Source: Oikopleura dioica (taxonomy: Eukaryota; Animalia; Chordata). From it: a DNA stretch of 64,000 bases. The stretch is taken from contig OU015568.1 of NCBI GenBank assembly GCA_907165135.1, positions 15,635,208-15,699,207 on the forward strand, in the 5' to 3' direction. Shown piece after piece: positions 4,082 to 43,059 of this stretch; the stretch's first letter is position 1, and every line of letters begins with the position of its first letter. The position numbers and the translations under genes are program-made. The notes beneath the pieces are model-generated. The model made no database searches, was not told the origin of the DNA, and saw only the letters and a list, made by a program, of their open reading frames with translations.

Positions 4082-6635
4082 CGCTGATAACTGGCGGAGC
4101 AGGGGGGATTGGCCGTTCCTGCGCCATCGAGTTCGCAAAAATGGGCATCAACCTTTTCCTCGTCGACTACAGTGCTGACCTCCTTCCAAAAACCGTCGCC
4201 GAAATCAAGAAAATCAATCCAAAAATCCAGATCAAAAGCAAAATCATGGATTTGACCAAACTAATGACGGATAAATCCGCTTACGAGGAGTTCAAAAACG
4301 AGTTGGATTCGGAAAAGATCGGTATTTTGTTTAATAATGCTGGCATAGGAAAAAGGGATGAAAAAAAACAATGAAGAAAAAGATGCTTGTTAGAGACTCT
4401 TTAATTAGAAAAAATGCTGAGTTGAAAAAGTGCGGTTATTCAGAAAACGAGAGCCAATTGTTTTAAATTAAAATTACCATCCCACCAAAGCCGAAACCAA
4501 GCTGTTTAATTACTCCGAAAGCTCGTACGAAGAAATCACGAACTTGGTGAAAATCAACATCGGCGTTCCCGCATTGCTCGACAGAATCGTTCTTCCTCAA
4601 ATGCTAAAGCGGAAGAACGGGCTGATCATGAACATGGGATCTGCTTCCGCAAAGACACCAGTCGGCCTGTTGCCTTTATATGGATCGTCCAAGTCGGGGT
4701 ACACGAAAGATAAACACTTCTAACATTGCTACGGAGTATCTGTCCGGAAAGTACAGTTATTTTCCTCTTTTGTGGACATTTTTTGTCCCATATTTTCTCA
4801 AAAATGTCCACAAAAGTGGGCAAGAGTCTCCAAAAAATGTCCCAACGTAGAGGCTTAAAATTTTTCGCTCCCATTAGTTTCTATCTAAAAACAGCAAATT
4901 TCATCCTTGAAACGCATTTTTCTTGCTTATTTTTTACTAAAGTCGGTTAAATGTTCCTCAAAAGCCACAAATATCTTAGAAAAAAGAAAAGATTTTTGAA
5001 AAAATACGCTATTTTTATCACCAGGGAAAATGTCCACAAAAGTGGAACATAATCTTTGCAAAAGTGTCCCACATAAACCCCTTTAAATGAAGAAAATGTC
5101 CACAAAGTTGGGATCCACAAAAGAGGAAAAAAACTGTATTGACTCAAAGAATACCAAATATGACAAGTTTCTAGCTCTAAACCATAGTACAGAGGGTAGG
5201 ATCGCTAACCTGCGTAGAAAACCTGAGTCAAGATTTGAGAGCTTTACGTTAGAGTTATAAAAGTACCCTCAGCCGTAACAAGGACACACTCCCCTGAGGG
5301 CAAGCCTGGTTAGCTCAGTCGGTAGAGCGTTGGACTCTTAATCCAACGGTCGCGGGTTCGAGCCCCGCATTAGGCTTACTTTTTCTCAATCCCTATTCCT
5401 AACCCCAATAGAGTCAGGTTTTCGTCACAAGTTGACTAGCACTCTTGGAATTTTAAGGCTAGCCAAAATAGGTTCTAAAAGTCTATAATTTTAAACTTTG
5501 AAGTTTCGCCTCTCAAGAATACTTTAACGGAGGAGTCTAAAATTTAGTGGCCTTCAGTGGACAGCAAAGCTCATGTAAACTTTTAAGTCAAGAGGTTGAC
5601 CCTTTTTAAAGTCCTTCATGATTCAGCTTTCGCAAAGTCTACAAGACGCTTATCCTTCGCACGAAAGCGGCATTACATTTCACGTGTTCCATCCACAATT
5701 CATTCGAACGCCAATGACGAAGGTTCTGGACGAAGGTACGCTAGTTATCCGAATTATTTAGATTTTATAGACTTTTGTCTAAGTGGTAATAAGATTGGTT
5801 ATTTTGAAACCAAGCGGTCATTGATGGAGAAAACAAGGAAACTAATCGTGTTATTAAGCCGACTCTTTTCAGGTGTTCATCAAGTGTGTTTTTCGCAAAA
5901 TCGATCTGCGTATTTGATAATTATTATTTCCCGAAGCGCGGTTGAAACAAAGTGAAGCTTTTTGTTTTCCCTAACACAAGGAGTTAATAAGGCTTGCTGA
6001 TGCTCATGCACATTTTGCGTGAAACTTAGGACATGTTTTTGGTTCAAGAAAAATCCACTTATTCGTCAAAATTCGGAATTTTAGACCTATTTTTAGCGGC
6101 AACCTGTGTAGAGAACGCGAGTCAGGTTCCTAAAGAACTTTTACGAAAAGCCGCGTAGCGGCTTTTTTTAAATACGGAGCCGCAAAGCGGCTTCGCCAAA
6201 ATTATAATTTCTATCTATTATATATTGTATATGATATATAACCTATTATAGCGAAGCCTAACCCTAACCCTAACCCTGACTCAGGAACTCTACACAGGTT
6301 GCCGATTCGGCAATGCCGAACCCAAATTTAGATTGGAAGGAGCAAAATAAAATTGCGGAAGCGATCAAAAACAAGTTCTTCCCTGTTGTCGAAGAATGGG
6401 TCCCTTCTGCGCTGAAAATGGTCGGAAGATATGAAACTTCTTGTGGATGGTACTTTCACGAGTTCGCCGGTAAAAAGAGATTTTTGAAGAAAAATTTATT
6501 TTTTTTAAAGTTTGGATGCAACCTGCAACTCAGTTTCTCGGTGCTCTGAAATGGGGATTTTCAAGAGATGCTGTCAGAAAAGCAATGAAGGAAAAACGAC
6601 TTCGAATGGAAAAATGTTCAAAGAAAAAGCAGTAA
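4082..6635 (+). CDS. Short-chain dehydrogenase/reductase, HSD17B12/3-ketoacyl-CoA reductase-like (5' end unresolved)
   Basis: Exons 4082-4348, 4491-~4696, 5612-5735, 6332-6469, ~6511-6635 give ALITGGAGGIG, NNAGI, YGSSK (YxxxK), HPQFIRTPMT, SALKMVG. Confidence 0.85.
4754..5136. mobile_element. Tc1/mariner-type MITE in SDR intron
   Basis: TA|CAGTTATTTTCCTCTTTTGTGGA...TCCACAAAAGAGGAAAAAAACTG|TA; internal GTCCACAAAAG repeats. Confidence 0.7.
5304..5376 (+). tRNA. tRNA-Lys: tRNA-Lys(CTT)
   Basis: Cloverleaf: acceptor GCCTGGT/ATTAGGC, D arm GCTC/GAGC, anticodon stem TTGGA-CTCTTAA-TCCAA, T arm GCGGG-TTCGAGC-CCCGC; T5 terminator follows. Confidence 0.95.
6097..6305. mobile_element. Degenerate CTGGGCTCGG-family MITE containing TAACCC repeats
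   Basis: CGGCAACCTGTGTAGA...TCTACACAGGTTGCCG inverted ends; GAGTCAGG/CCTGACTC; AAGCCGC hairpins. Confidence 0.7.
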
Positions 6636-7639
6636 CCCTAACGATACCCTGATAAAAACGCGCTAGACTAGAGCGGCCTTGATTCACTGATTCAAATAAA
6701 ATAAAGCAAAAATACCTGAAGACGAAATAGCCAGTCTCCCAAGGCACATTCCACTGGCAATAACAAGTGTACTTTGAATTTTGATCGTTCCAGATATTCC
6801 GGCATTTGTCAGGACCATTCGAGTCGAATTTTAGCGGACTTGGATGGATTCAAAAGTTGAAATCAACGAGGACTCATTCCAAAATCAATCACTTCTTTCG
6901 CGCGTTTTAATCTAAGCGAGATGCGAGAGAAATCACTTGATCCTCTGGTGATCCTCTTTTGGCTCATTTCGATCTAAGAATCCGTTTCTTGCACTTGATG
7001 TTTCATTCACCGTTAGTTGCTGGCGATAGTGGCTTATTCAGGGGTAATGCATATTCTGAACTAAATCCAACAATTCCAAAGTTAAATATGATCATCCTAA
7101 ATCGAAGACTTCTGAACTAGAATTTGGCATTTGGTTCCAAACTTCAGAAACTTGACAAAAAATCATGATTTTTGACCTCTGATTCTCCTTTTCTTATAAT
7201 CGAGGATCTATCGGAATAACTGTCAATTCGTATTCGTTACGATCTCTTATAAATTATGCGCCATTAGTAACGCGATAATGGATAGTTTACTCGAGTTCGG
7301 TTGGAGATTTGAAATTAAGGATGTCCACAAGGAAAAAAACTATACGGAACATAGTCAAAATTCCGCACAGAATCATGATGATTGGGGAAAATTGCTGTGG
7401 ACACCCTTAATTCGACGATTTTACTGATTTTTGGGGACCCCCTCTGGTATTTAAAGAAATCAATTAAAATAGTGAGAAACTGTCAGATTTGTCAAAATAA
7501 ATATTTCATCTCTGCCTGTGAAATTGACAAGCTAAGGTAAGATTACTAAGTATTTCGCTGTGGCTAAGAAAAAAAATAAGTCAAGTTCAAGTCAAGTAAT
7601 CCGACAGTTGGAGAAATGCAGATTTACGCGAAAAGTAAA

Positions 7640-9557
7640 TCGCTCATTAATGTCGAATTGGCTGCGATACCCTGTCCAAGCTGTCTATATTGCATTTGCA
7701 CAAGACAAATGGTCAGCGTCGCGGCCCAAGTAGCCAGAGTTGTCTTTACCGAGTGGCTAATCGTTCTCAGCTCGCGCAGCTTTAGCGGGTAAACTGTTAT
7801 CGGGTTAAACTCTGCTCAGCTCGATATTAGTCTCATTTAGCAGCATCAGGAAAGTTCTATAGCGCTTCGTAGATTGTCTCTTTGGCTCAATAAAAATGAT
7901 CTTCTTCGAAAAACACATTCTCAACATTTCTTTAGTTAACCCTTAGCAACGCAGATGTATCTGTCCAGCGAAATCATGACCAAAAAGGCAGTTGATCCAT
8001 ACAAATTCAAAAGGGCCAGGAAACTATGAGTTTTGCACAAGAACCAGCCAAAAATCCAACTTTCGCTTGGGATCATTAATTTTGCGCTTACAACTAAAAC
8101 TTCCTTTTTCTTTGCCTAAGGCTACTACTTAAGGGTACCTGGGTCGAGATGGCCATCTTTGAGGGTAAATTACTACCCTTAATACTTAACGAAAAAAGCA
8201 CCTTAATAGCTGATTCAACAGATCTATCCTAGATCTCGGATCGTGACAGAGCAGTTTTTTCGATTTCAAAAATTTTTTTCAGAAAAAATGCCCTCAAAGT
8301 TGGCATCTCGGCCTAAAATGGCCAACTTTGACGCTAAATTCAGGCGAAAATTTTCATACAAACATTTTCTTTCTTTTTGGATACATAAAGTCTAAAGCCT
8401 CCTCTACAATCGTGACAGAGCAGATATTTGGATTTCAAAGATTTTTTTAACAAAATTTTCAAAAGATTGGTCTAGTCTTCACAAATTCCGCATTTTTGCT
8501 TGGTAAGCTTCCATTTTCCCCGGTTTTGAACAGAATTTAATTTTCTTGGGCAATTTTAAGCTTCACTACGATGTTAACCAGGCCATAAGCTTTCATTTAA
8601 GCCCTTAATCAGCAAAATTGGAGATGGAAAATTTTTCGTCAAAATTTGAGGCACTAGCATTTCCTATAGATTTTATACTTTACAGTGGTTTTTGACCGTG
8701 AAAACGTTTAGATAGCCATAGGGTCATTATAGAGTTTTTTGTTCCTTAGAACCTGTAGAATTGGATTCTTTGGTCAGAAAATGGTTTAAGGGGGTACCCA
8801 AACTCGACCTAGGTACCCTTAATCCTTAATCATTTAGGAACACAAATTCAAGAACGCTGTGCCCAAAAATGGACTAAACCAATTTATAGAAGTGCATTTT
8901 TGGATAACCAATAAGATTGCTGTATTTGTCCTAACAGCCAATCAAAACCCTGATCCATAAAATCGCTTCCATAAATTGGTTTAACCCCCAAAAATAACAT
9001 TGAAAATCGACTGATTTCTAGCCTAAAATCTAGGAAATCGATCCGGTCAAAATATAATCTGCTGCTAAAATTGAAGATGATCCCGGCCCGATTGTTAAGA
9101 ATTTGTTCAATCCACATCAATGGAAGTGCCTGGGTGAACACAACATTCGCCGCTGTCATGTTCAGTAAATATAAATGAGCTTTCATGCAGGATGCATAAG
9201 ATAAGGGTGTACCTACTCCTCTATGTTATCAAACTAATTTGACAGGAGCAATGGTGGATGAATTGATTAATATTTTTTCTGCATCCCGAAGCTACCGCTT
9301 TCTTTTTCTTCCAAACTTGAATGAGTTTTTTAATCAACCAAATGTTTCCGACCATTCCAAAGAGAAAAACAAAAAACTTCGCGGTTTTCATTTAAAAATA
9401 ATTTATTAAAATTTTTTTTTTGAATATTTTTAAGTGCCTTGTTTTGAAAACCTTCATAAACAACCAAGTAAATGTAAGTAAACACATCCAGTCGATTGAT
9501 AAATGTATGATAAAGTCCATCGCAATAAGCCAGGAAGTTCATTCTGTCGAATCCCAT
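7640..9557 (-). CDS. Class A (rhodopsin-like) GPCR, peptide-receptor type; TM1-TM4 identified, 3' end unresolved (probably to ~6700)
   Basis: Spliced exons give VFLFGMVGNIW (TM1 GN), HLYLLNMTAANVVF (TM2), WIFGWFLCK...ISLDRYICV (DRY at 7957-7965), TWAATLTICL (TM4). Confidence 0.8.
8133..8818. mobile_element. Non-autonomous DNA transposon, Kolobok-like (TTAA TSD, GG termini)
   Basis: TTAA|GGGTACCTGGGTCGAG...CTCGACCTAGGTACCC|TTAA; lies in GPCR intron between TM2 and TM3. Confidence 0.75.
8871..8989. repeat. Dispersed repeat, reverse copy of 18408-18549
   Basis: Shared AAACCAATTT...GGGTTTTGA...CAAATACAGCAATCTTATTGG...AAATTGGTTTAGTCC. Confidence 0.75.
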
Positions 9558-31107: not shown

Positions 31108-31900
31108 TTATTCAAGTTGTACCAGGGCTGATTTTCTTTGCAGGGGTTGTTGGAAACGGGCAGCTTATTTCAGCAAAACGCGAGTCTGGTCGAACTTTGG
31201 CAAAATCAATGGCAGGATCTGCATTCATTCGCTCCCATTCTCCATCAAGAAAGCTTTGTGAAACTGCGTTTTCAACAGGATCAACCTTCTCTTTCGTTTT
31301 TTCTTGCGATCTAGCAGAAGAAAATGCAAGTTGATTTCGTGAAGGCTAGAAAATCGACGATAAGTTCTACATACTAGTATAAAATGCTTTCTTACCAAAG
31401 CTGCTGGTTTTAGGGGAGTTCCTTGTAAATAAACATCTCTCGCTTGTATATTTTTGCTTCTCGCTTCCATGAAAGGCGATTTTTTTTTCAATAGAACTGA
31501 ATATATTTTGATCTTTCTCAATAATCTGACGTTTATTCTAGAGAAAAATGGATGCATGCTTGCGTTGAAAAATTCATCGTCCCAGGCAGGGGTGGATATT
31601 TTGATTTCAACTCCTCATTTCAACACCAATTTGGCCATCCTGATTGGTCGAGAACGGGAATTTCGGGGTTTGAAATGAGGTTTGAAATCAAAATATCCAT
31701 CCCTGGTCCCAGGTGTTTGAAAATTTTCGCCAATTTTGATATTTCTGCGATTTAGGAAATCGTTGGGTGTTCGTGGCCGTATCAGGTGCCAGGTGCGACC
31801 CAATAAATGGAAGCGAGCTGATCCGGTGGCTCGGCGGTGGTGTTAGTGGCCCGTACTGAATCGGACGGATATTACGCGCGCCCATCAACAATATCACGCC
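31108..31900 (-). CDS. Uncharacterised gene fragment (3' exons)
   Basis: TTG|GTAAG...TTTTCTAG|CCT intron ~31346-31396 joins GTPLKPAAL to PSRNQLAFSSARSQEK...PGTT*. Confidence 0.4.
31587..31705. mobile_element. hAT-like MITE (119 bp)
   Basis: GTCCCAGG|CAGGGGTGGATATTTTGATTTCAA...TTGAAATCAAAATATCCATCCCTG|GTCCCAGG. Confidence 0.88.
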
Positions 31901-33060
31901 AGATGGTCGCTGCCCTGCCGGCTAACTGCGCAAAAGTTTATTAATTTGGAATTGATATTGCCGTGTTTCCGGGGCGCACTTTATCTAATTTAAACTCCTT
32001 CCGAAGAAATTTACGACTCGCTCTCTATTTATCATTTTCAATCCCTCTGGGCCACGCGGGATACAACTTCAAAAAATGCGAAAAAAACAAGTTTCAATTG
32101 ATAATTTCAAAATTTTTTCGGTTATATTTTCAATAGTTTCTAGCATCTGTATAATCCTTTGATTTTATAGTATCTTGCATAAAACACAAGATAAAACCTC
32201 GACAATGAGAAAACAAAACAGATAAAAAAGCAACCACCAAGATAAGAGGCAACAAGTAAAAGTACGATACGAGATTCGGAGAGAGCAAGCGATGGCGGTG
32301 CGGTAAATCCTGGCGCCGAGCAGTCTGCCGCTAGAGGAGCGCCGCAGCACCAAATTCGTACTACACCGCCGAGCTAGGGTGTCCCTCGGCTCTGGCTCTT
32401 GAATTCATAAAAGCTGAAACTGAAGGAGAATTTCAAGCGAAATTCTAAAGAACCATAAATCTGGGTTTGATTCTTGCTTTTTAATTTTTGATGATTATCA
32501 TATAACTTGGATGATATGAGATAAATTTTAAACGGTTAACGATATAAAAAAGATCCATTCTTTCTATTCAGTCAAGCGCAAAAAATTACTAAAATAAGCT
32601 GACTTACACAATCAAGAGCATAAACGTCAAAAATCATTTTTGCATCATCCAAAGCTGGCAGTATTTATGACTGTTTTCAGTAATAATTTCCATGAGAAAC
32701 TACAGCCCCGTCGTTGCGATCTCTTTTCTCGTGGACTGCAGCTGCAGCGGGATGTCCTTCAAACTCAGTTGTATTTGTTAGAGTGGTGTTTGTTCAATCT
32801 TTCCTTCTTTTTATGATCTCGTTCTAGCGGATCATCAGAGTAGAAAGGTCGAATTCCCGTACTTTTTATTGAAACGAAGACTGTTTCTGTGTTTGTTAAT
32901 CCATCAACGATTTGTACTTCCTTTCCACTTACTAAATCGCGCCCGACCAGGTGCGGCCACTTTCAATTTTCTTGGACGGGGCCCAATTTTTTCAGGATAA
33001 AGGATTATCCGGGGATAGATTACTGATAAAAAAAGGAGAACTACTGTTAACAACAGATCG

Positions 33061-35280: not shown

Positions 35281-36191
35281 CCTCAAGAGGGTGTCTATTT
35301 TGATGCCCTTATTTCTTGCCTGATGCTTGGCACGAAAGTTTATTTCAGACTGGGTCATTTTAAATGGCCCGAACCCTAACCCTAACCTTGAGAATTGGTC
35401 TAGCGTAAACTTCGTTGTGCTAGAATTACTGCATTTCGAGTTGACTAATGAAAAGTATTAATTTACCTGAGATAGGCCCTGAGTGGATTTCGGCAGCTGA
35501 TTTCATAAAAGTTATCACCACTTGAGCAAGTTTAATTTTCGTATCTTTCGATTAAAGAGCAAAGGTGTCAGCGGCCGCTGCAGCCTTGTTCACCGATAAG
35601 TTACCACCACTTGGCGAGTCATCTGTATGTGGGCGACGCTTCGACAAAATCATTATTTTCCTCATGTCCTCTTGTGTCATCGAAGCTGTCAGAAGGTTGT
35701 TTGATTATTTTATGGTCCATGTGTAAGCTTGGTTATTTCTCGAACAAGCGGAAAATAATTGATTCTCTGCCCGAATTCAAGGCCAAATTGGTATTTTTGT
35801 ACGACCAAAAATTTGAATTTTCGTGACAATTTTCACCAAAATTTTGGTCAATTTCGAGTCCAATAAAATTTCCGCATTCGGCCTATAGGCCAATCAGATT
35901 TCAGAAAAAAGAAATAATCGCATTTTTCGTCGATTCGAGACGCGACTCAAAAATTTCTAATTTGAAAAAAGATTTTTATATTAATTTTTTTTTTGCAAAA
36001 TCGTCTTTATCAGTAAAAAAGCTCTTTTGACAGAAAATTTATAAAGAAATTTCTATACTAGAGCTAGAACTGACCCATCGAGGCTCTAGTAGACTGTGAC
36101 CGATTATACAGATGAGTATGCCGCTCAAAAAACAGTGGAAATGGCGCAATGAAAAGATGGATAGAGGTTAGCTAGCGGCCGCCCGATGTGG

Positions 36192-36240
36192 CAGACAGTC
36201 CGGCGCCTATGACTGCAGGTGCACCGCGCGCTATAACTCG
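36192..36240 (+). promoter_or_regulatory. BMP-responsive Smad element plus E-box and TATA upstream of Id-like gene
   Basis: CAGAC-AGTCC-GGCGCC (36192-36207) = reverse of GGCGCC-N5-GTCTG; CAGGTG at ~36217; CTATAA at ~36232. Confidence 0.6.
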
Positions 36241-36447
36241 CAGCGCGCTCGCCTCCACCGCTAGTCACCACCGTCCCGTCGCCGTCTCCACACACCGACC
36301 AGAAATCAATAAAACAACTAATTTTTTCCGAAAAATCGAGAACCAACAAAAATCTACATTTTCAACGAGAACGAGAGAACCAAATCAAAACAGCAACCAC
36401 CAAACCCCTCTCGTTTGAAAACAGAAGCAAAACAGCAACAACAAAAA

Positions 36448-36645
36448 ATGGCTGTCAAAACCGAAACCTACAACCAAGAATTAATCAAAACCTACAAACA
36501 GCAAGAAGCCTTCCTGCAAATTCTCAAAGCCTTGGTTGCTCAGGACCCGTTCCAGCCGATCAACGAGCTGCAGCTGATAGAAGAAACGATTCTTTATATA
36601 AAATTGTTAAAATGCCAGGTCGACGCTGTTAAATCGACGTTTTAA
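36448..36645 (+). CDS. Id: Id/extramacrochaetae-like HLH protein without basic region (65 aa)
   Basis: EAFLQILKALV-loop-NELQLIEETILYIKLLKCQV aligns with the emc/Id helix 2 pattern (xxLEIIQHVIDYIxDLQ); single exon. Confidence 0.65.
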   Translation: MAVKTETYNQELIKTYKQQEAFLQILKALVAQDPFQPINELQLIEETILYIKLLKCQVDAVKSTF

Positions 36646-38279: not shown

Positions 38280-39212
38280 TTAAATAGGTGATCCCCTTAA
38301 TTCCTTAACGCGGACACCTCCCATAAGTATTTGACGGTTGAATTTGGGCCCATATATTTTTTTTTCTTTTGAGAAAATAAAATGATGCCATTCTTTGATG
38401 ACAACAACAAATTATTGTTCATCTGGAAAGAAAGCATAATTAACAATAAAATTCAAGCCGTATATAAATTGATTAGTCTTAAACATATGTACCACGTCGA
38501 ATAGAGAGTCCCTAGTTAGTCATACTAATTCTAGTCTGAGATGCACGTGAATGGATTCACTCCGGTAGCTGTGTTATGAATACCGATTGCAGATTTTTTT
38601 CTCCCCGGTTTGCTGACAAGAAAACATTTACACATGGTGGACACCCTGGAGCTCGTTTGCATTCGTATTTTGGGAAAAAGTTAGCTGCTCAGATCTGACG
38701 CCGAATTTTCAAGTGTTATTTAATTAGTCACCAGTCTAAAATCACCCCTTTCCTGCTTTATTGAAATAGTAGCTTGAGTGTTAAAAAAAAGGAAAATCCC
38801 GCCTGGCACGTTATTTATCTCCCCACTGCCAGGTTGGATAATTATTATCTCCCTGCCGCCTTTCCTTATTTCCTGATGCTCAATTGCTCATGCATATGAC
38901 AGCTTGGTATGTTCTGCTTCTTGATCCCACCCAATCTGGTGGCACTTTGGCGGGTTCATTAGAAGCTGTCACCGGATCTACCTTCCTCAAATCGTCGGGG
39001 AGAGGGATATATACTCTCCGCCTGGCGGTGGCGCCGATCAAATCCGACTAGTCATTTCTTTTTTTATCGAACTAGATACCTACATTCATCCTGGCGCGGG
39101 TGTCAGCCATCGGGAACCTGCGCCCAAAGGTGTCAGACGCAGCCAGAAAAAGAATCGAAGCCCGAAGAGAGCACGGGTAGAGGCCCTTTGTCGCCTTTGC
39201 GAACACTAAATC

Positions 39213-40941
39213 CACCTGCATACTTTCAACTTTTTCTAACGCGGTAGTCTTCCTGATAACTTAAAAAATAGCCAAAAAACTTCAATTTTTTTAATCGAAA
39301 AATCAAAATTTTCGATCGAAATATTCAAAATTTGATATATTTGTGGGAACTTTTGAAAGCGCTTTTTGAAATTGGAATGAAATTTTTCGTCGGAATTTTG
39401 ATCTTCCCAGCTGAGAAAAAAAGGGGTGGGCGGCGCCAGGCAGGTGCTGGTGCTCATGGATTGGTGGTGCACCTGTGGAGAGAGAGAGGGGCACCAAAAG
39501 AAAGAAACGAAAGCAGGTGGCTGAGTAATGCGCCCCGACTTGTGTAAAATTTAATCCGCGGTGGGATAAAGGGGAGATGAAAATTTCGCTGTTTACTTTA
39601 CGGCGAGTCGTCGGCCCGCCTGCTGCTTTTTGCGCCTGCTGTGGCACCACCACCACCAGTATTGGCACCTGCTCACTACACCTGGCTCTGCTCTCGGTGG
39701 TTATCAACCACCTGTGCTGTTTCTCCTTCTTTCAATATCGAAGTCATTTTTTTTCTCAATCGAATTCAATATTATCGAATAACACGAAACAAACTTGGTT
39801 TATTTAAGGGTGTATCTGTCCTAAGTCAAAAAGTCCGATTTCAATCAAAGAAAAGAAGGAAAATTAATGTTCGAAGGCTATCTTCCTTATTTTGAATAAA
39901 TCCTGTCCAGTTTTAATTCGAGTTTCTTAGTCTCTCACAGGTGGCCTTAGCTCAGCAGGAGGCCTGTACAGGTGGAGCGAGAACGTTATCTAATCCACCG
40001 AAAGCCTCTTCTAAACTTCCGTCAGCCGCATCAGAGCGAGAGATTGCAGCAATTTTTTTCTTCGCTGGGCTACAGGTGCATCAGTTGCATCGGCCACCTG
40101 TTTTAAAGCAGCAATCAGTAGCTATCCTCGGCTGATTACAAAGGTTTTTGCTTATCATCAGAACGTGGGGCGTCGTGCGTACGCCGTGCTACTCGATAAT
40201 CGATGTCCTGCCGAGTAGTAGTGGAGCAGGTGTTGCCTCTTCGTGGTGGTGGTGTCCTTCTACGGCTGGATATAATGCAGGTGCTCCCCGTGCGCCCAGC
40301 TGGACACTGATAAAGTACTCAATATGTGTATGATTGTTTTGGGCAGGAGCCACGGCGTTATCAGTAGCCGCTCCCCTGCTGGGGCCCACGAGCCAGGTGC
40401 CTCACTGCCACGCCAGGTGCCAGCACCACCTCCACCAGATATCAACAGAAATGCACCTGCTGGTCAGAAGCATGCTGCTATTTTTCATGTCAAAACGGGG
40501 CCTCATCCATCTCACTGGTCGGTTTTCGGAAATTGATCGTCCAGCTATTTCTGGTACAGTACTTTTTTACCAGATTTTCAAGCGTTGAAATAAGCAATAG
40601 TCTAATCAATTTAATTTTGACACCCTTAAACTGAAAAAAGAATTTCTCAAAAATCTCTCCCTAAATCGTAATCTTCTTGAAATGAACCTGTTTTTGTACG
40701 ATGCTTATTATACAGTAAAGTTTCTCCGTCCACCTGGTGATGGTCCTCCACCTGTGTGGCTCATCCCAGCAGGTGCGCCCAAGCAGTTGGTGGTGGAGGC
40801 GAAGGAGCAGCTGGCGGCGGTGCTGGTGGTGCGACTCTGTCACCACCAGCTGCTCCATGGTGGCTCACACAGGTGGCTACCCCGGACGCGAGACTAGCTC
40901 AAGTCAAAATTTTAACCCGCCGGCTGGTACTTTGCCAGGTG
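39213..40941. promoter_or_regulatory. Homotypic CAGGTG E-box array upstream of BMP3
   Basis: 21 CAGGTG/CACCTG sites counted by hand in 1.73 kb; no long ORF. Confidence 0.65.
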
Positions 40942-41246
40942 TGGATCATCCGCTGGATCAGGCAAAAAGATGAGACTTTAGCTGCCCGTTTTTAAAATAA
41001 CGGATTTGACCGTCATTTCTCACTCAATTCTACCTTGTGTGGTAAAAAATGCTGCGACAGAATCGTAATAATGGAATCTCTCTGGCTTTCTTGCGGGGCC
41101 ACCCTAGCGCTCTAGCGCGTACTACACTCAGAAAATGCGCCGCGGTCGCTCTGGCCTTCGGTTTCGCCGCTGATCACTCCGACCACTTCGACGATTTCGA
41201 CCGACACACTTTCATAACTAAGAGATTTAACAACGCATTCACCAAG

Positions 41247-43059
41247 ATGAGAGCAGTTTTATTGGCTCTCGTGCTCTCAATTTTCGACAAAACCAACTCA
41301 GCCGCCATCGATGAAGATTTTGGAAAGTTTTTCAACGGCGCAAGGCCTTTCAGACGTTCTGAAAATGCGAAAATTTCAGACCTGGCCAAAGGTAAGAAGA
41401 GGGGTTATTCAAGAGGCAGGAATTTTACCGGTTTTTGACGAGCACGTGTTCAAACGGCCTGCGCAGGATTTTATTGGCACGAGCTGGCCGCCGACGGAGG
41501 TCACACTTGGGTTAATATTTACCGCAAATACAGCCCTACAACAGATGTAGCCTTATATTATTGAGAACTCTGAGTCCTTTCTGTGACTTCGTAATTGTAT
41601 CGCTTTCCATACCGTGGTTGTATGTACTGTAATTGAGCGAAGGAGATTGCGCGCGGATCAAAGGAAAGGGTAGTTTTCGCAGGTGCGGCAGTGGTGAAGG
41701 GGAATATTTACTGTAGCTGTAATAAACGCATTCAGGCACTGCTCCGGCATTTCTCCTTCATCTTTACGAAAAGCTCAAATCGCTGGACGAGGATTCGCAA
41801 CAAAAGCTCCTCGCCGATGGGAACACCGTCCGCGCCGTTTACCCAATAGAAGGTATTGTAACACAAATCCCCAAACACCTGCAAATTGCTCTCTATGTGT
41901 TCCTAGAGAATGCAGCACTCTCACGCAACCTGAGATCTGTTGACAATTGTCTTTGTAGATGCTGAAGGCAGGTGGATCTTTGACGTTTCGGCTTTGCCGG
42001 AGAACGAGAAAGTCGTGACATCCGAGTTCCGGGCGGTATTAGGACCCGGCCCTCAGGTGAGTCTTAAAAACACTCTTTCATTTCATCAAACGCACATAGA
42101 AACACATGAACATACGACACACAGCTACAGTATCTGTCCTCCAACTCAGCATTTCTCAAAAACCGACGAGATTTTTACCAGAAAATTTCACAAAAACAAA
42201 GTCATCAACTGTCATTCCTCGATCTGATGTTTGGACGAGTGCACTTTTCAAACGCCTTATTCACGAAGCAGTTGATGAGAACACATATCTTCAGCTTGAT
42301 ATTGATAGTTTACCTGAAAAGTAAGATCTTTTCTTTTTGCGTCTTCTTCAAATTTTTCTTCAGTCAAGACTTCATGCCGATATTGGTCCTCTACTGCAAC
42401 GACATCGACCAAAATGTGCCGGAAAAGATGGCAGAGCCACTTGACAGTCTTCTAAGAAAAAGAAGAGAGACAACATCTTTTCCTTTGAGGTAAGAAAAAT
42501 GTTCAAGAAATTAAATCAAACTGCCAAATTCAGCACGGAAGAAGAGCAAAAGACGCGCCGAAAACAACGAAGAGAACGAAAATGTAAAAAGCGAAAGAAT
42601 ACTCGTAGAAAGTCCTGCTCAAAGAAACGTGAGAAACTCAAGATTATAAAAAATCATTTGATATTTAGATTCAAGAAAATTGTCAGAAAAAATGAAGAAG
42701 AGAAAGTGCCAGAGAAAGAGTCTTCATATCGACTTCAATGAAATCGGCTGGAATAGCTGGATTATTGAGCCAAAAAGCTTCGATGCATTCTATTGTGCTG
42801 GCCAATGCGGCTATCATGAGATGCTGGTAAGTGACGAATTTTCTTACTCTTCACTAGTTATAAATTTCAGAGCTCGAAGAAATCAAACCACGCATTTCTC
42901 CAATCAATCATGAACAGATACGAGCCAGAAGTGCCCCTGCCCTGCTGCGTTCCAGACAAACTCGCTCCTCTGAGCATTTTATACAACGAAGAGAGCTCGC
43001 AACACGTCGTTCTCAAAGTCTATCCAAATATGTCCGTACTTTCGTGCTCGTGTAGATGA
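41247..43059 (+). CDS. BMP3: TGF-beta family ligand, BMP3/GDF10-like
   Basis: Signal peptide, prodomain (FLLHLY...GNTVR), RKRR site, mature CQRKSLHIDFNEIGWNSWIIEPKSFDAFYCAG...PCCVP...VVLKVYPNMSVLSCSCR*. Confidence 0.88.

What the first reader, a model, noticed from the sequence alone, without database searches (positions are those of the whole stretch)
39213..40941. Dense array of 21 CAGGTG E-boxes in GC-rich blocks upstream of BMP3
Sites start at 39213, 39441, 39470, 39514, 39666, 39679, 39709, 39938, 39969, 40073, 40095, 40227, 40278, 40394, 40414, 40454, 40731, 40749, 40770, 40870, 40936. About 1 is expected by chance. Both orientations occur in non-repetitive context; 16 are RCAGGTG, 5 CCAGGTG, none TCAGGTG. 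Established: RCAGGTG is bound by Snail/Scratch/ZEB and by E-protein/achaete-scute dimers. Inference: an unusually large homotypic enhancer or silencer under selection.
Basis: partly seen in the sequence, partly recalled or inferred. Interest (0 to 1): 0.8.

Follow-up and report, generated by a model that had tools for sequence, protein, structure and literature searches.

The report
Conserved E-box array upstream of BMP3
A 1.5-kb non-coding stretch just upstream of the BMP3/GDF10-like gene of the tiny tunicate Oikopleura dioica carries 20 CAGGTG sites, all unchanged between two lineages that have diverged heavily, so it is very probably a strongly selected gene switch.

Summary
There are 21 CAGGTG sites at the stated coordinates, against 0.45 expected from the genome-wide rate and 0.8 from local dinucleotide shuffles.

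- **Not a repeat or an exon.** The stretch is single copy, not tandemly repeated and non-coding.
- **Densest in the genome.** It holds 9 of the 44 CAGGTG triplets found in the 64.3-Mb genome.
- **Conserved.** At the orthologous locus of another O. dioica lineage (L004), 20 of the 21 sites are present in the same order. All 120 E-box bases are identical, against 80% for the rest of the same blocks and about 53% at third codon positions of a neighbouring gene.
- **Orientation-independent.** One 320-nt block is inverted between the lineages yet keeps all six of its sites.
- **Kept in other taxa.** Two further marine relatives, known only from metagenome contigs, also have CAGGTG clusters upstream of their BMP3 genes, although the flanking DNA no longer aligns.

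Best reading: a modular cis-regulatory region of BMP3 read through class-A E-boxes. CAGCTG is co-enriched and conserved, which favours bHLH E-protein dimers over Snail-type repressors, but both readers exist in this species and neither was tested. This is a new and extreme example of a known kind of element. Binding and regulatory activity remain untested.

The parts
39405..39725 (.). Conserved GC-rich module 1 (56% GC). It holds six CAGGTG sites (39441, 39470, 39514, 39666, 39679, 39709) and one CAGCTG (39408). It is inverted relative to the other O. dioica lineage.
   Evidence: The reverse strand of the window aligns to L004 7237-7642 (alignment A2). 36 of 36 E-box bases are identical, against 213 of 285 other bases.
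39726..39930 (.). AT-rich spacer 1 (30% GC) with no E-box.
   Evidence: Composition and site counts. It is only partly alignable to L004.
39931..40505 (.). Conserved GC-rich module 2 (53% GC). It holds nine CAGGTG sites (39938, 39969, 40073, 40095, 40227, 40278, 40394, 40414, 40454) and one CAGCTG (40297). It contains perfectly conserved runs of up to 85 nt.
   Evidence: Alignment A1. 54 of 54 E-box bases are identical, against 428 of 514 others. Conserved runs are listed. Order, orientation and spacing match L004 7731-8211 one to one.
40506..40715 (.). AT-rich spacer 2 (34% GC), not conserved and largely absent from the other lineage.
   Evidence: 23% identity, with 133 of 210 positions gapped (alignment A1).
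40716..40975 (.). Conserved GC-rich module 3 (60% GC). It holds five CAGGTG sites (40731, 40749, 40770, 40870, 40936) and two CAGCTG (40808, 40847).
   Evidence: 30 of 30 E-box bases are identical, against 184 of 230 others. It corresponds one to one with L004 8361-8548.
39213..39218 (-). It is not part of the conserved array.
   Evidence: L004 has no CAGGTG between 5651 and 7307, although window 38794-39225 aligns to L004 6515-6899.
40976..41246 (+). Proximal promoter or 5' leader of the BMP3-like gene. It has patchy conservation and one 44-nt perfectly conserved run at 41168-41211.
   Evidence: 59% identity overall; the conserved run is listed.
41247..43056 (+). BMP3/GDF10-like TGF-beta ligand gene, the presumed target. 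Exon 1 is 41247-41391, exon 2 is 41737-41850, exon 3 is 41957-42056 and the last exon is 42871-43056. The middle exons were not fully modelled.
   Evidence: Pfam TGF_beta hits at 1.8e-14 and 3.8e-15. RNA reads confirm intron 41851-41956 and the joining of exon 1 to exon 2. Protein P0002 is labelled Oikopleura dioica, and its nearest named relatives are GDF10.
36448..36645 (+). Upstream neighbour: a 65-residue ORF predicted to form helix-loop-helix. It may be an Id/Emc-like HLH-only protein and is an alternative or additional target of the array.
   Evidence: 83% amino-acid identity in L004. The AlphaFold model has two helices at pLDDT 81. It gives no Pfam HLH hit, and the Atlas search gives only a weak HLH lead at 0.82. 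The fold search was non-specific.

Best explanation
The stretch 39405-40975 is a non-coding, modular cis-regulatory region of the BMP3/GDF10-like gene that starts 311 nt after the last site. It consists of three GC-rich modules separated by fast-evolving AT-rich spacers. Its main working parts are 20 class-A E-boxes of the form VCAGGTGB, plus four CAGCTG sites. Proteins that read CAGGTG occupy many of these sites at once, so BMP3 transcription depends steeply on their concentration. My preferred reader is a dimer containing one of the two E-proteins (E12/E47/Daughterless type), acting as an activator with tissue-specific bHLH partners. Snail-type zinc-finger repressors probably compete for the same sites where BMP3 must stay off. 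Shown here: the clustering, its uniqueness in the genome, its non-coding nature, selection on the sites, tolerance of a module to inversion, and linkage to BMP3 in four taxa. Inferred: that it regulates transcription, that BMP3 is the target, and which proteins bind.
For: The enrichment is extreme. There are 21 sites against 0.45-0.8 expected, and the array holds 9 of the genome's 44 CAGGTG triplets, making it the densest such locus.

The stretch is not a repeat and not coding.

Selection on the sites is clear. At the orthologous locus of another O. dioica lineage (L004, GCA_000209555.1), 20 sites have matching order, orientation and spacing. There, 120 of 120 E-box bases are identical against 825 of 1029 other block bases (Fisher p = 2.8e-11). 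All 20 sites are kept against 52.8% of other hexamer windows (P about 3e-6). In the same comparison a housekeeping GH63 exon has 142 substitutions, 114 of them at one codon position, so neutral sites differ at about 47%.

Module 1 is inverted between the lineages and keeps all six sites, as expected for an orientation-independent enhancer module.

The arrangement is kept outside O. dioica. Two other taxa, known from marine metagenome contigs, carry CAGGTG clusters 5' of their BMP3 orthologues: 13 sites against 0.50 expected, 11 against 0.45, and 6 against 0.24. Their flanks do not align to the O. dioica blocks. Between contigs L007 and L008, 10 of 10 sites are kept against 42.5% of other windows.

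The flanking bases follow a rule. A 5' T occurs in 0 of 70 sites and a 3' A in 2 of 70, a strand-symmetric constraint that suits a dimeric reader.

CAGCTG is enriched (4 observed, 0.24 expected) and all four sites are conserved.

Both candidate readers exist in the species. Two tandem E-protein bHLH genes are in the genome, and a snail homologue is reported as expressed (bioRxiv 10.64898/2026.03.31.715263).
Against: No binding, chromatin or reporter data were available, so regulatory activity is inferred from sequence evolution alone. The modules are conserved well beyond the E-boxes, including an 85-nt perfect run without any CAGGTG, so other factors or another function contribute. A 261-nt metatranscriptome contig covers 40065-40320, so some transcription cannot be excluded. 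The single RNA-seq run laid on the region came from a diverged lineage and covered BMP3 itself at only 3-8x, so the near-absence of reads on the array is weak evidence. The flank statistics do not separate bHLH from Snail/ZEB readers cleanly. The species identity of the metagenome contigs is unknown.
Confidence: 0.78

Rival explanations
1. The array is mainly a Snail/Scratch/ZEB-bound silencer. The zinc-finger repressors occupy the CAGGTG sites and keep BMP3 off in tissues that express them, such as the house-producing epithelium. Activation comes from the non-E-box conserved parts.
For: The CAGGTG core with a 5' purine in 15 of 20 sites fits the Snail-family preference (the preference itself is established knowledge). 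A snail homologue is reported as expressed in most oikoplastic cell types. Several sites come in pairs 13-22 nt apart, which would suit two-handed ZEB-type binding. Non-E-box conserved runs exist that could carry activator sites.
Against: CAGCTG, which Snail-family proteins read poorly, is co-enriched 17-fold and conserved at 4 of 4 sites, and it co-clusters with CAGGTG in L007 as well. The 3' base is G in 8 of 20 sites rather than a pyrimidine. The flank constraint is strand-symmetric, as for a dimer. No ZEB gene was looked for.
Confidence: 0.3
2. The array serves the upstream HLH-only (Id-like) gene, or both neighbours, rather than BMP3 alone. E-proteins would switch on their own inhibitor through a downstream enhancer.
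For: The array lies 2.8-4.3 kb 3' of a conserved 65-residue helix-loop-helix ORF. The promoter of that ORF keeps a GGCGCC-N5-GTCTG element and a GCAGGTGC site perfectly between lineages. The two genes stay adjacent in both O. dioica lineages.
Against: In the third taxon the E-box clusters remain 5' of BMP3, with no Id-like ORF in the 9.7 kb of contig L007 that lies upstream of its last BMP3 exon. The array abuts the BMP3 start at 311 nt. The HLH identity of the ORF is unproven: there is no Pfam hit and the fold search was non-specific.
Confidence: 0.15
3. The conserved modules are exons of an unannotated transcript (a non-coding RNA, a long 5' leader of BMP3 or a small-protein gene), and the CAGGTG words are a by-product.
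For: One frame of module 2 has only two stops in 570 nt. Acceptor-like sequences sit at the starts of modules 2 and 3. A metatranscriptome contig covers 40065-40320. Conservation reaches well beyond the E-boxes.
Against: There is no codon periodicity (p 0.26-0.74, against a clear signal in the coding control). Twelve of 16 indels break the frame, and stops occur in almost every reading frame of each block in both lineages. Module 1 is inverted between lineages. Sites occur on both strands. Oligo-dT RNA gives about 0-1x here against 3-8x on BMP3 exons. Rfam gives no hit. The E-boxes are significantly more conserved than the rest of the modules, and they persist in taxa where the modules do not align.
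Confidence: 0.06
4. The stretch is an architectural element, such as an insulator or boundary or a Polycomb-type memory element, bound by a zinc-finger protein whose motif contains AGGTGG, rather than a classical enhancer or silencer.
For: The stretch lies between two developmental genes.
Against: Only a minority of sites fit the longer motif. The conserved unit is the hexamer plus one base on each side. Nothing comparable marks other gene boundaries in the genome.
Confidence: 0.04
5. The cluster is chance, a by-product of base composition, or a decayed satellite or transposon.
For: The blocks are GC-rich and also rich in GGTGGTG/CACCACC words (10 observed, 0.19 expected).
Against: Dinucleotide shuffles of the blocks themselves give 1.24 against 20 observed. 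The stretch is single copy and not tandem. The sites are conserved one to one across lineages.
Confidence: 0.01

Closest known systems
Homotypic clusters of transcription-factor binding sites in developmental enhancers and silencers, for example the Snail sites in the Ciona Brachyury enhancer and in the Drosophila rhomboid and sim enhancers, or the E-box clusters of immunoglobulin and muscle enhancers
   Same: It shows many copies of one short motif, on both strands, in a few hundred bases of non-coding DNA next to a developmental gene. The sites are conserved while the spacers drift, and the modules tolerate inversion.
   Different: Classical examples have 2-6 sites. This one has 20 perfect hexamers in 1.5 kb, the densest cluster in the whole genome. 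Binding and activity are untested here.
Highly conserved non-coding element clusters (genomic regulatory blocks) around developmental genes
   Same: Its non-coding blocks are more conserved than neighbouring housekeeping exons: 92-100% runs against 78-82% exon identity. It sits beside a signalling-ligand gene, and local gene order is kept in a genome known for extreme scrambling (10.1101/2023.05.09.539028).
   Different: Most such elements have no single dominant motif. Here one hexamer explains the most constrained positions, and the motif cluster persists in taxa where the element itself no longer aligns.
E-protein (E12/E47/TCF12/Daughterless) class-A E-box targets, including the Daughterless-Emc/Id feedback circuit of Drosophila
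   Same: It has the CAGGTG/CAGCTG cores with GCAGGTGC-like flanks. E-protein genes are present, and a possible HLH-only gene lies next door.
   Different: No occupancy data exist, the Id-like identity of the neighbour is unproven, and the presumed target is a BMP3-type ligand rather than an HLH gene.
TFAP4-type CAGCTG E-box reported upstream of 259 zygotic-specific start sites in O. dioica (PMC6389100)
   Same: It is the same species, and an E-box sits close to a zygotic promoter. Four conserved CAGCTG sites lie in the array.
   Different: That motif is a single promoter-proximal CAGCTG. The array is dominated by CAGGTG and spreads over 1.5 kb.

Membership tests
Homotypic-cluster cis-regulatory module (enhancer or silencer) | Statistically significant local clustering of one binding motif | tested here: met
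   21 sites against 0.45-0.8 expected; 9 of the genome's 44 triplets.
Homotypic-cluster cis-regulatory module (enhancer or silencer) | Non-coding, non-repetitive DNA | tested here: met
   No periodicity, frame-breaking indels, stops in almost every reading frame of each block (two exceptions) and no Pfam hit; single copy with no tandem repeat.
Homotypic-cluster cis-regulatory module (enhancer or silencer) | Motif instances under stronger constraint than surrounding DNA | tested here: met
   120 of 120 bases against 825 of 1029, p = 2.8e-11; 20 of 20 sites against 52.8% of other windows; replicate 10 of 10 against 42.5%.
Homotypic-cluster cis-regulatory module (enhancer or silencer) | Occupancy by the cognate factor, open chromatin and reporter activity | not testable with these tools
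   No ChIP, ATAC or reporter data could be reached.
Snail/Scratch/ZEB-bound silencer | CAGGTG core with Snail-type flanks (5' purine, 3' pyrimidine) and no need for other E-box cores | tested here: inconclusive
   5' purine in 15 of 20 sites and 3' pyrimidine in 12 of 20. Co-enriched, conserved CAGCTG is not explained by this family.
Snail/Scratch/ZEB-bound silencer | The repressor gene is present and expressed in the species | not tested
   This rests on the literature only: a snail homologue is reported as expressed in the oikoplast (10.64898/2026.03.31.715263). ZEB was not looked for.
Class-A E-box enhancer read by E-protein-containing bHLH dimers | CAGSTG cores with strand-symmetric flank preference | tested here: met
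   The only cores present are CAGGTG (21), CAGCTG (4) and CAACTG (2). A 5' T occurs in 0 of 70 sites and a 3' A in 2 of 70.
Class-A E-box enhancer read by E-protein-containing bHLH dimers | E-protein genes present in the genome | tested here: met
   Two tandem HLH hits on C4 carry the ANNARERLRV(R/K)DINEAFK signature. They were assigned by signature from established knowledge, with no phylogeny.
E-box-GATA composite element (TAL1/E47/LMO2/GATA type) | GATA sites enriched and at a fixed short distance from the E-box | tested here: not met
   WGATAR occurs 5 times against 2.9 expected, and no fixed spacing was seen.
Satellite or transposon remnant | Tandem or dispersed copies | tested here: not met
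Protein-coding exon | Open frame, codon periodicity of substitutions and frame-preserving indels | tested here: not met
   with a GH63 exon as positive control.
BMP3/GDF10 subfamily of TGF-beta ligands (the neighbouring gene) | C-terminal cystine-knot TGF_beta domain with closest named relatives in BMP3/GDF10 | tested here: met
   Pfam PF00019 on two exons. The best named hits of P0002 are GDF10 at 44-54%. No phylogeny was made.

The most novel reading that the evidence does not exclude
The array may be the middle part of a hard-wired, cis-linked feedback cassette kept in larvaceans. A BMP-responsive HLH-only (Id-like) gene, whose promoter keeps a perfect GGCGCC-N5-GTCTG element, sits 2.8 kb from a 20-site E-protein sensor that drives BMP3, a BMP antagonist in vertebrates. 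BMP signalling would raise the Id-like protein, titrate E-proteins off the high-valency array and switch BMP3 off in a steep, switch-like way.
Probability: 0.1. Interest if true: 0.75.

Novelty: new member of a known kind. Interest (0 to 1): 0.58.

Why it matters
O. dioica has the fastest-evolving and most scrambled animal genome described so far. Housekeeping exons in this neighbourhood are only about 80% identical between its cryptic species, and third codon positions differ at about 47%. Against that background, a 1.5-kb non-coding stretch that keeps all 20 copies of one hexamer, through an inversion of one module and into taxa where nothing else aligns, is an unusually clean natural experiment. 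It shows which bases of an enhancer matter. It gives a ready-made, motif-defined test case for site number, orientation and spacing in a chordate with a tiny genome. It also points to E-box readers as the main input to BMP3 in larvaceans, a ligand on which a full-text search found no larvacean study.

Tried and rejected
- **Coding reading.** Six-frame translation, Pfam on the longest frames, codon-periodicity and indel tests all came out negative.
- **Satellite, transposon or composition.** Rejected.
- **Known RNA family.** Rfam finds only a U6 and a tRNA elsewhere in the window.
- **Exon-sized protein query.** It found only an amphioxus fragment. The orthologue had to be reached through the length-agnostic search.
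- **RNA evidence.** Its per-site list for the DNA run of 'organism B' was truncated, so it gave only block-level divergence: 2.3% here against 3.5-3.8% beside it.
- **Nucleotide similarity to other taxa.** None was found between the O. dioica modules and the upstream regions of the metagenome taxa.
- **GATA co-enrichment.** Not significant.
- **Id identity of the upstream ORF.** Pfam, the PDB sequence search and Foldseek were all non-specific; only a weak Atlas lead pointed to HLH.
- **Gene beside the second-densest cluster (C3:1722750).** No family hit.
- **Literature.** No paper describing this array or larvacean BMP3 regulation was found.

Full report
**Where this is.** The genome has 64,281,565 bases in 19 pieces, and the window lies on a 17,092,476-b scaffold. 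This matches the published Okinawa assembly OKI2018_I69 of the larvacean tunicate Oikopleura dioica: 64.3 Mbp, 19 scaffolds, longest 17.1 Mbp (PMC8008620). A protein encoded beside the finding is labelled Oikopleura dioica in NCBI.

**The observation.** Sixteen are RCAGGTG, five are CCAGGTG and none is TCAGGTG. The genome holds 16,582 CAGGTG sites, which gives 0.45 expected per 1,729 bases. Two thousand dinucleotide-preserving shuffles of the region itself give 0.80 +/- 0.89, with a maximum of 5. Shuffles of the three GC-rich blocks alone give 1.24 against 20 observed. So base composition does not explain the count.

**Repeats and genome-wide rarity.** The stretch is single copy in the genome. 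It has no tandem array and only short, chance-like internal repeats. As a genome-wide test I searched for three sites separated by gaps of at most 100 nt, in all four orientation classes. There are 14 + 13 + 10 + 7 = 44 matches in 64.3 Mb, and nine of them fall inside this interval. The runner-up, at C3:1722750-1723007, has six sites in 260 nt. The density here is therefore unique in the genome, not common.

**Anatomy.** The sites sit in three GC-rich modules: 39405-39725, 39931-40505 and 40716-40975, at 53-60% GC. AT-rich spacers of 26-34% GC separate them and hold no site. Other over-represented words are:
- CAGCTG: 4 observed, 0.24 expected.
- GGTGGTG/CACCACC: 10 observed, 0.19 expected.

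The only E-box cores present are CAGGTG, CAGCTG and CAACTG.

Downstream, 311 nt after the last site, a TGF-beta ligand gene starts at 41247. Pfam TGF_beta matches two of its exons. RNA reads confirm an intron and an exon junction. The nearest named relatives of its product are GDF10/BMP3b.

Upstream, at 36448-36645, lies a 65-residue ORF that the first-stage reader called Id-like. It is 83% conserved in the other lineage and is predicted to form helix-loop-helix. However, Pfam, the PDB sequence search and Foldseek give nothing specific, and the Atlas search gives only a weak HLH lead.

**Not coding, probably not an exon.**
- Substitutions between lineages show no three-base periodicity in any module (p = 0.26-0.74).
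- Twelve of 16 indels are not multiples of three.
- Stops occur in almost every reading frame of each module in both lineages, with two exceptions.
- A GH63 exon used as positive control has 114 of 142 substitutions at one codon position.
- Rfam finds nothing here.
- An oligo-dT RNA run covers the BMP3 exons at 3-8x and the array at about 0-1x. This is weak evidence, because the run comes from a diverged lineage.
- One 261-nt metatranscriptome contig does cover 40065-40320. It may be enhancer RNA or carried-over DNA.

**Conservation, the decisive evidence.** A length-agnostic protein search reached P0002. Its contig is L004, record FN654645.1 of GCA_000209555.1, from a different O. dioica lineage. 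From memory, this is the North Atlantic Bergen strain.

- *Background divergence.* The neighbourhood 31.7-52.6 kb is colinear between the two lineages, and housekeeping exons are 78-82% identical at the nucleotide level. [quoted passage not shown]
- *Site-for-site match.* L004 has 20 CAGGTG sites at 7307-8553. The 14 sites of modules 2 and 3 match one to one in order, orientation and near-identical spacing (alignment A1).
- *Inversion.* Module 1 aligns only in reverse orientation and keeps all six sites (alignment A2).
- *Numbers.* Across the three modules, 120 of 120 E-box bases are identical against 825 of 1029 other bases (Fisher p = 2.8e-11). All 20 hexamers are intact against 52.8% of other hexamer windows in the same modules, giving P about 3e-6. 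All four CAGCTG sites are also intact.
- *Spacers and the outlier.* Spacer 2 is essentially unalignable at 23% identity. The outlying site at 39213 has no counterpart in L004, so the true array has 20 sites.

**Beyond O. dioica.** Marine metagenome contigs carry BMP3 orthologues of two further taxa that I could not name. L007 and L008 are one taxon; L006 and L009-L011 are another. Their exon 2 is 45-63% identical and their last exon about 66% identical at the amino-acid level.

Upstream of these genes CAGGTG is again clustered:
- L007: 13 sites in 3.5 kb, 0.50 expected.
- L008: 11 sites, 0.45 expected.
- L010: 6 sites in its first 600 nt, where the contig ends, 0.24 expected.

Their upstream DNA shows no nucleotide similarity to the O. 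dioica modules. L007 and L008 are about 90% alike and keep 10 of 10 sites, against 42.5% of other hexamer windows. This is an independent replicate of the selection test.

Over all 70 sites, which are not all independent, a 5' T never occurs and a 3' A occurs twice. The motif is therefore VCAGGTGB, with a strand-symmetric flank rule.

**Mechanism.** Together these facts fit a modular, orientation-independent cis-regulatory region whose most constrained bases are class-A E-boxes. It stays linked to BMP3 in four taxa. In L007 no Id-like ORF lies in the 9.7 kb of contig upstream of the last BMP3 exon, which favours BMP3 over the upstream gene as the target.

Both candidate readers exist in the species:
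- The genome has two tandem E-protein bHLH genes on C4, recognised by the ANNARERLRV(R/K)DINEAFK signature, and several achaete-scute-like genes.
- A snail homologue is reported as expressed in most oikoplastic cell types.

I favour bHLH dimers as at least one reader. CAGCTG is co-enriched and conserved, and the flank constraint is symmetric. Snail competition at the same sites is plausible. None of this binding was tested. The modules also contain long conserved runs without any E-box, for example 85 nt at 40296-40380, so the element is heterotypic with one dominant motif.

**Comparison with what is known.** This belongs to two known kinds: homotypic binding-site clusters in developmental enhancers and silencers, and conserved non-coding elements near developmental genes. 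What is unusual is the degree:
- twenty perfect sites in 1.5 kb;
- the densest cluster in the genome;
- conservation higher than in neighbouring exons, in an exceptionally fast-evolving genome;
- survival of a module inversion;
- persistence of the motif cluster where the sequence no longer aligns.

I found no paper describing it. An AP-4-type CAGCTG E-box has been reported near zygotic promoters of this species (PMC6389100).

**Earlier scan notes.** One note reported a BMP-response element at the Id-like promoter. I checked it in part: GGCGCC-N5-GTCTG at 36192-36207 and the adjacent GCAGGTGC are perfectly conserved in L004 (alignment A3). Another note reported a GATA plus CAGGTG motif field around Friend-of-GATA on another scaffold. 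I did not test it. GATA sites are not enriched in the present array.

**Verdict.** The finding is a new and extreme member of a known kind. Function and the identity of the readers remain to be shown by experiment.

Noticed in passing
window 36120-36645: A small 65-residue ORF predicted to form helix-loop-helix is 83% conserved in the other lineage. Its promoter keeps a GGCGCC-N5-GTCTG (BMP-response-like) element at 36192-36207 and a GCAGGTGC E-box at 36216 perfectly between lineages. HLH/Id identity is not confirmed by Pfam or the fold search.
   Followed up: partly
G000:C1:15710110-15710268 (L003 477-1178), about 11 kb past the window end: This is the best HLH hit in the whole genome, a 233-residue ORF. 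Its bHLH reads like Atoh8/Net (assigned from memory). A CAGGTG-CACCTG-CAGGTG triplet lies 3.3 kb downstream at C1:15713559-15713638.
   Followed up: partly
G000:C3:1722750-1723007 (L001 4951-5208): This is the second-densest CAGGTG cluster in the genome, with six sites in 260 nt. It lies about 60 nt upstream of an ORF starting MHKVSMSKR that has no Pfam family.
   Followed up: partly
window 41426-41575: A stretch inside intron 1 of the BMP3-like gene is 88-100% identical between lineages, higher than most of the gene's exons. It may be an intronic regulatory element or an unmodelled exon.
   Followed up: no
window 41168-41211: A 44-nt run is perfectly conserved between lineages just upstream of the BMP3 start codon. 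It may be core promoter or 5' leader.
   Followed up: no
window 31721-32016: A conserved non-coding block (86% identical to L004 147-446) contains the window's other CAGGTG triplet (31710, 31783, 31790). The tandem pair 31783/31790 is kept in L004 at 206/213.
   Followed up: partly
window 35488-35696: A second conserved non-coding block is inverted between the two O. dioica lineages (85.6% identical to L004 3075-3291 on the opposite strand).
   Followed up: no
G000:C4:7209692-7209850 and C4:7229905-7230063: Two E-protein-type bHLH genes lie about 20 kb apart on the same strand, which looks like a tandem duplication of the E12/E47/Daughterless orthologue.
   Followed up: partly
window 40065-40320: A 261-nt contig from a marine metatranscriptome (run X18, 3 differences) covers part of module 2. 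It may be enhancer RNA or DNA carried over in the library.
   Followed up: no
window 18563-18669 (-) and 5304-5376 (+): A U6 snRNA gene (110 bits) and a tRNA gene were found by Rfam.
   Followed up: no
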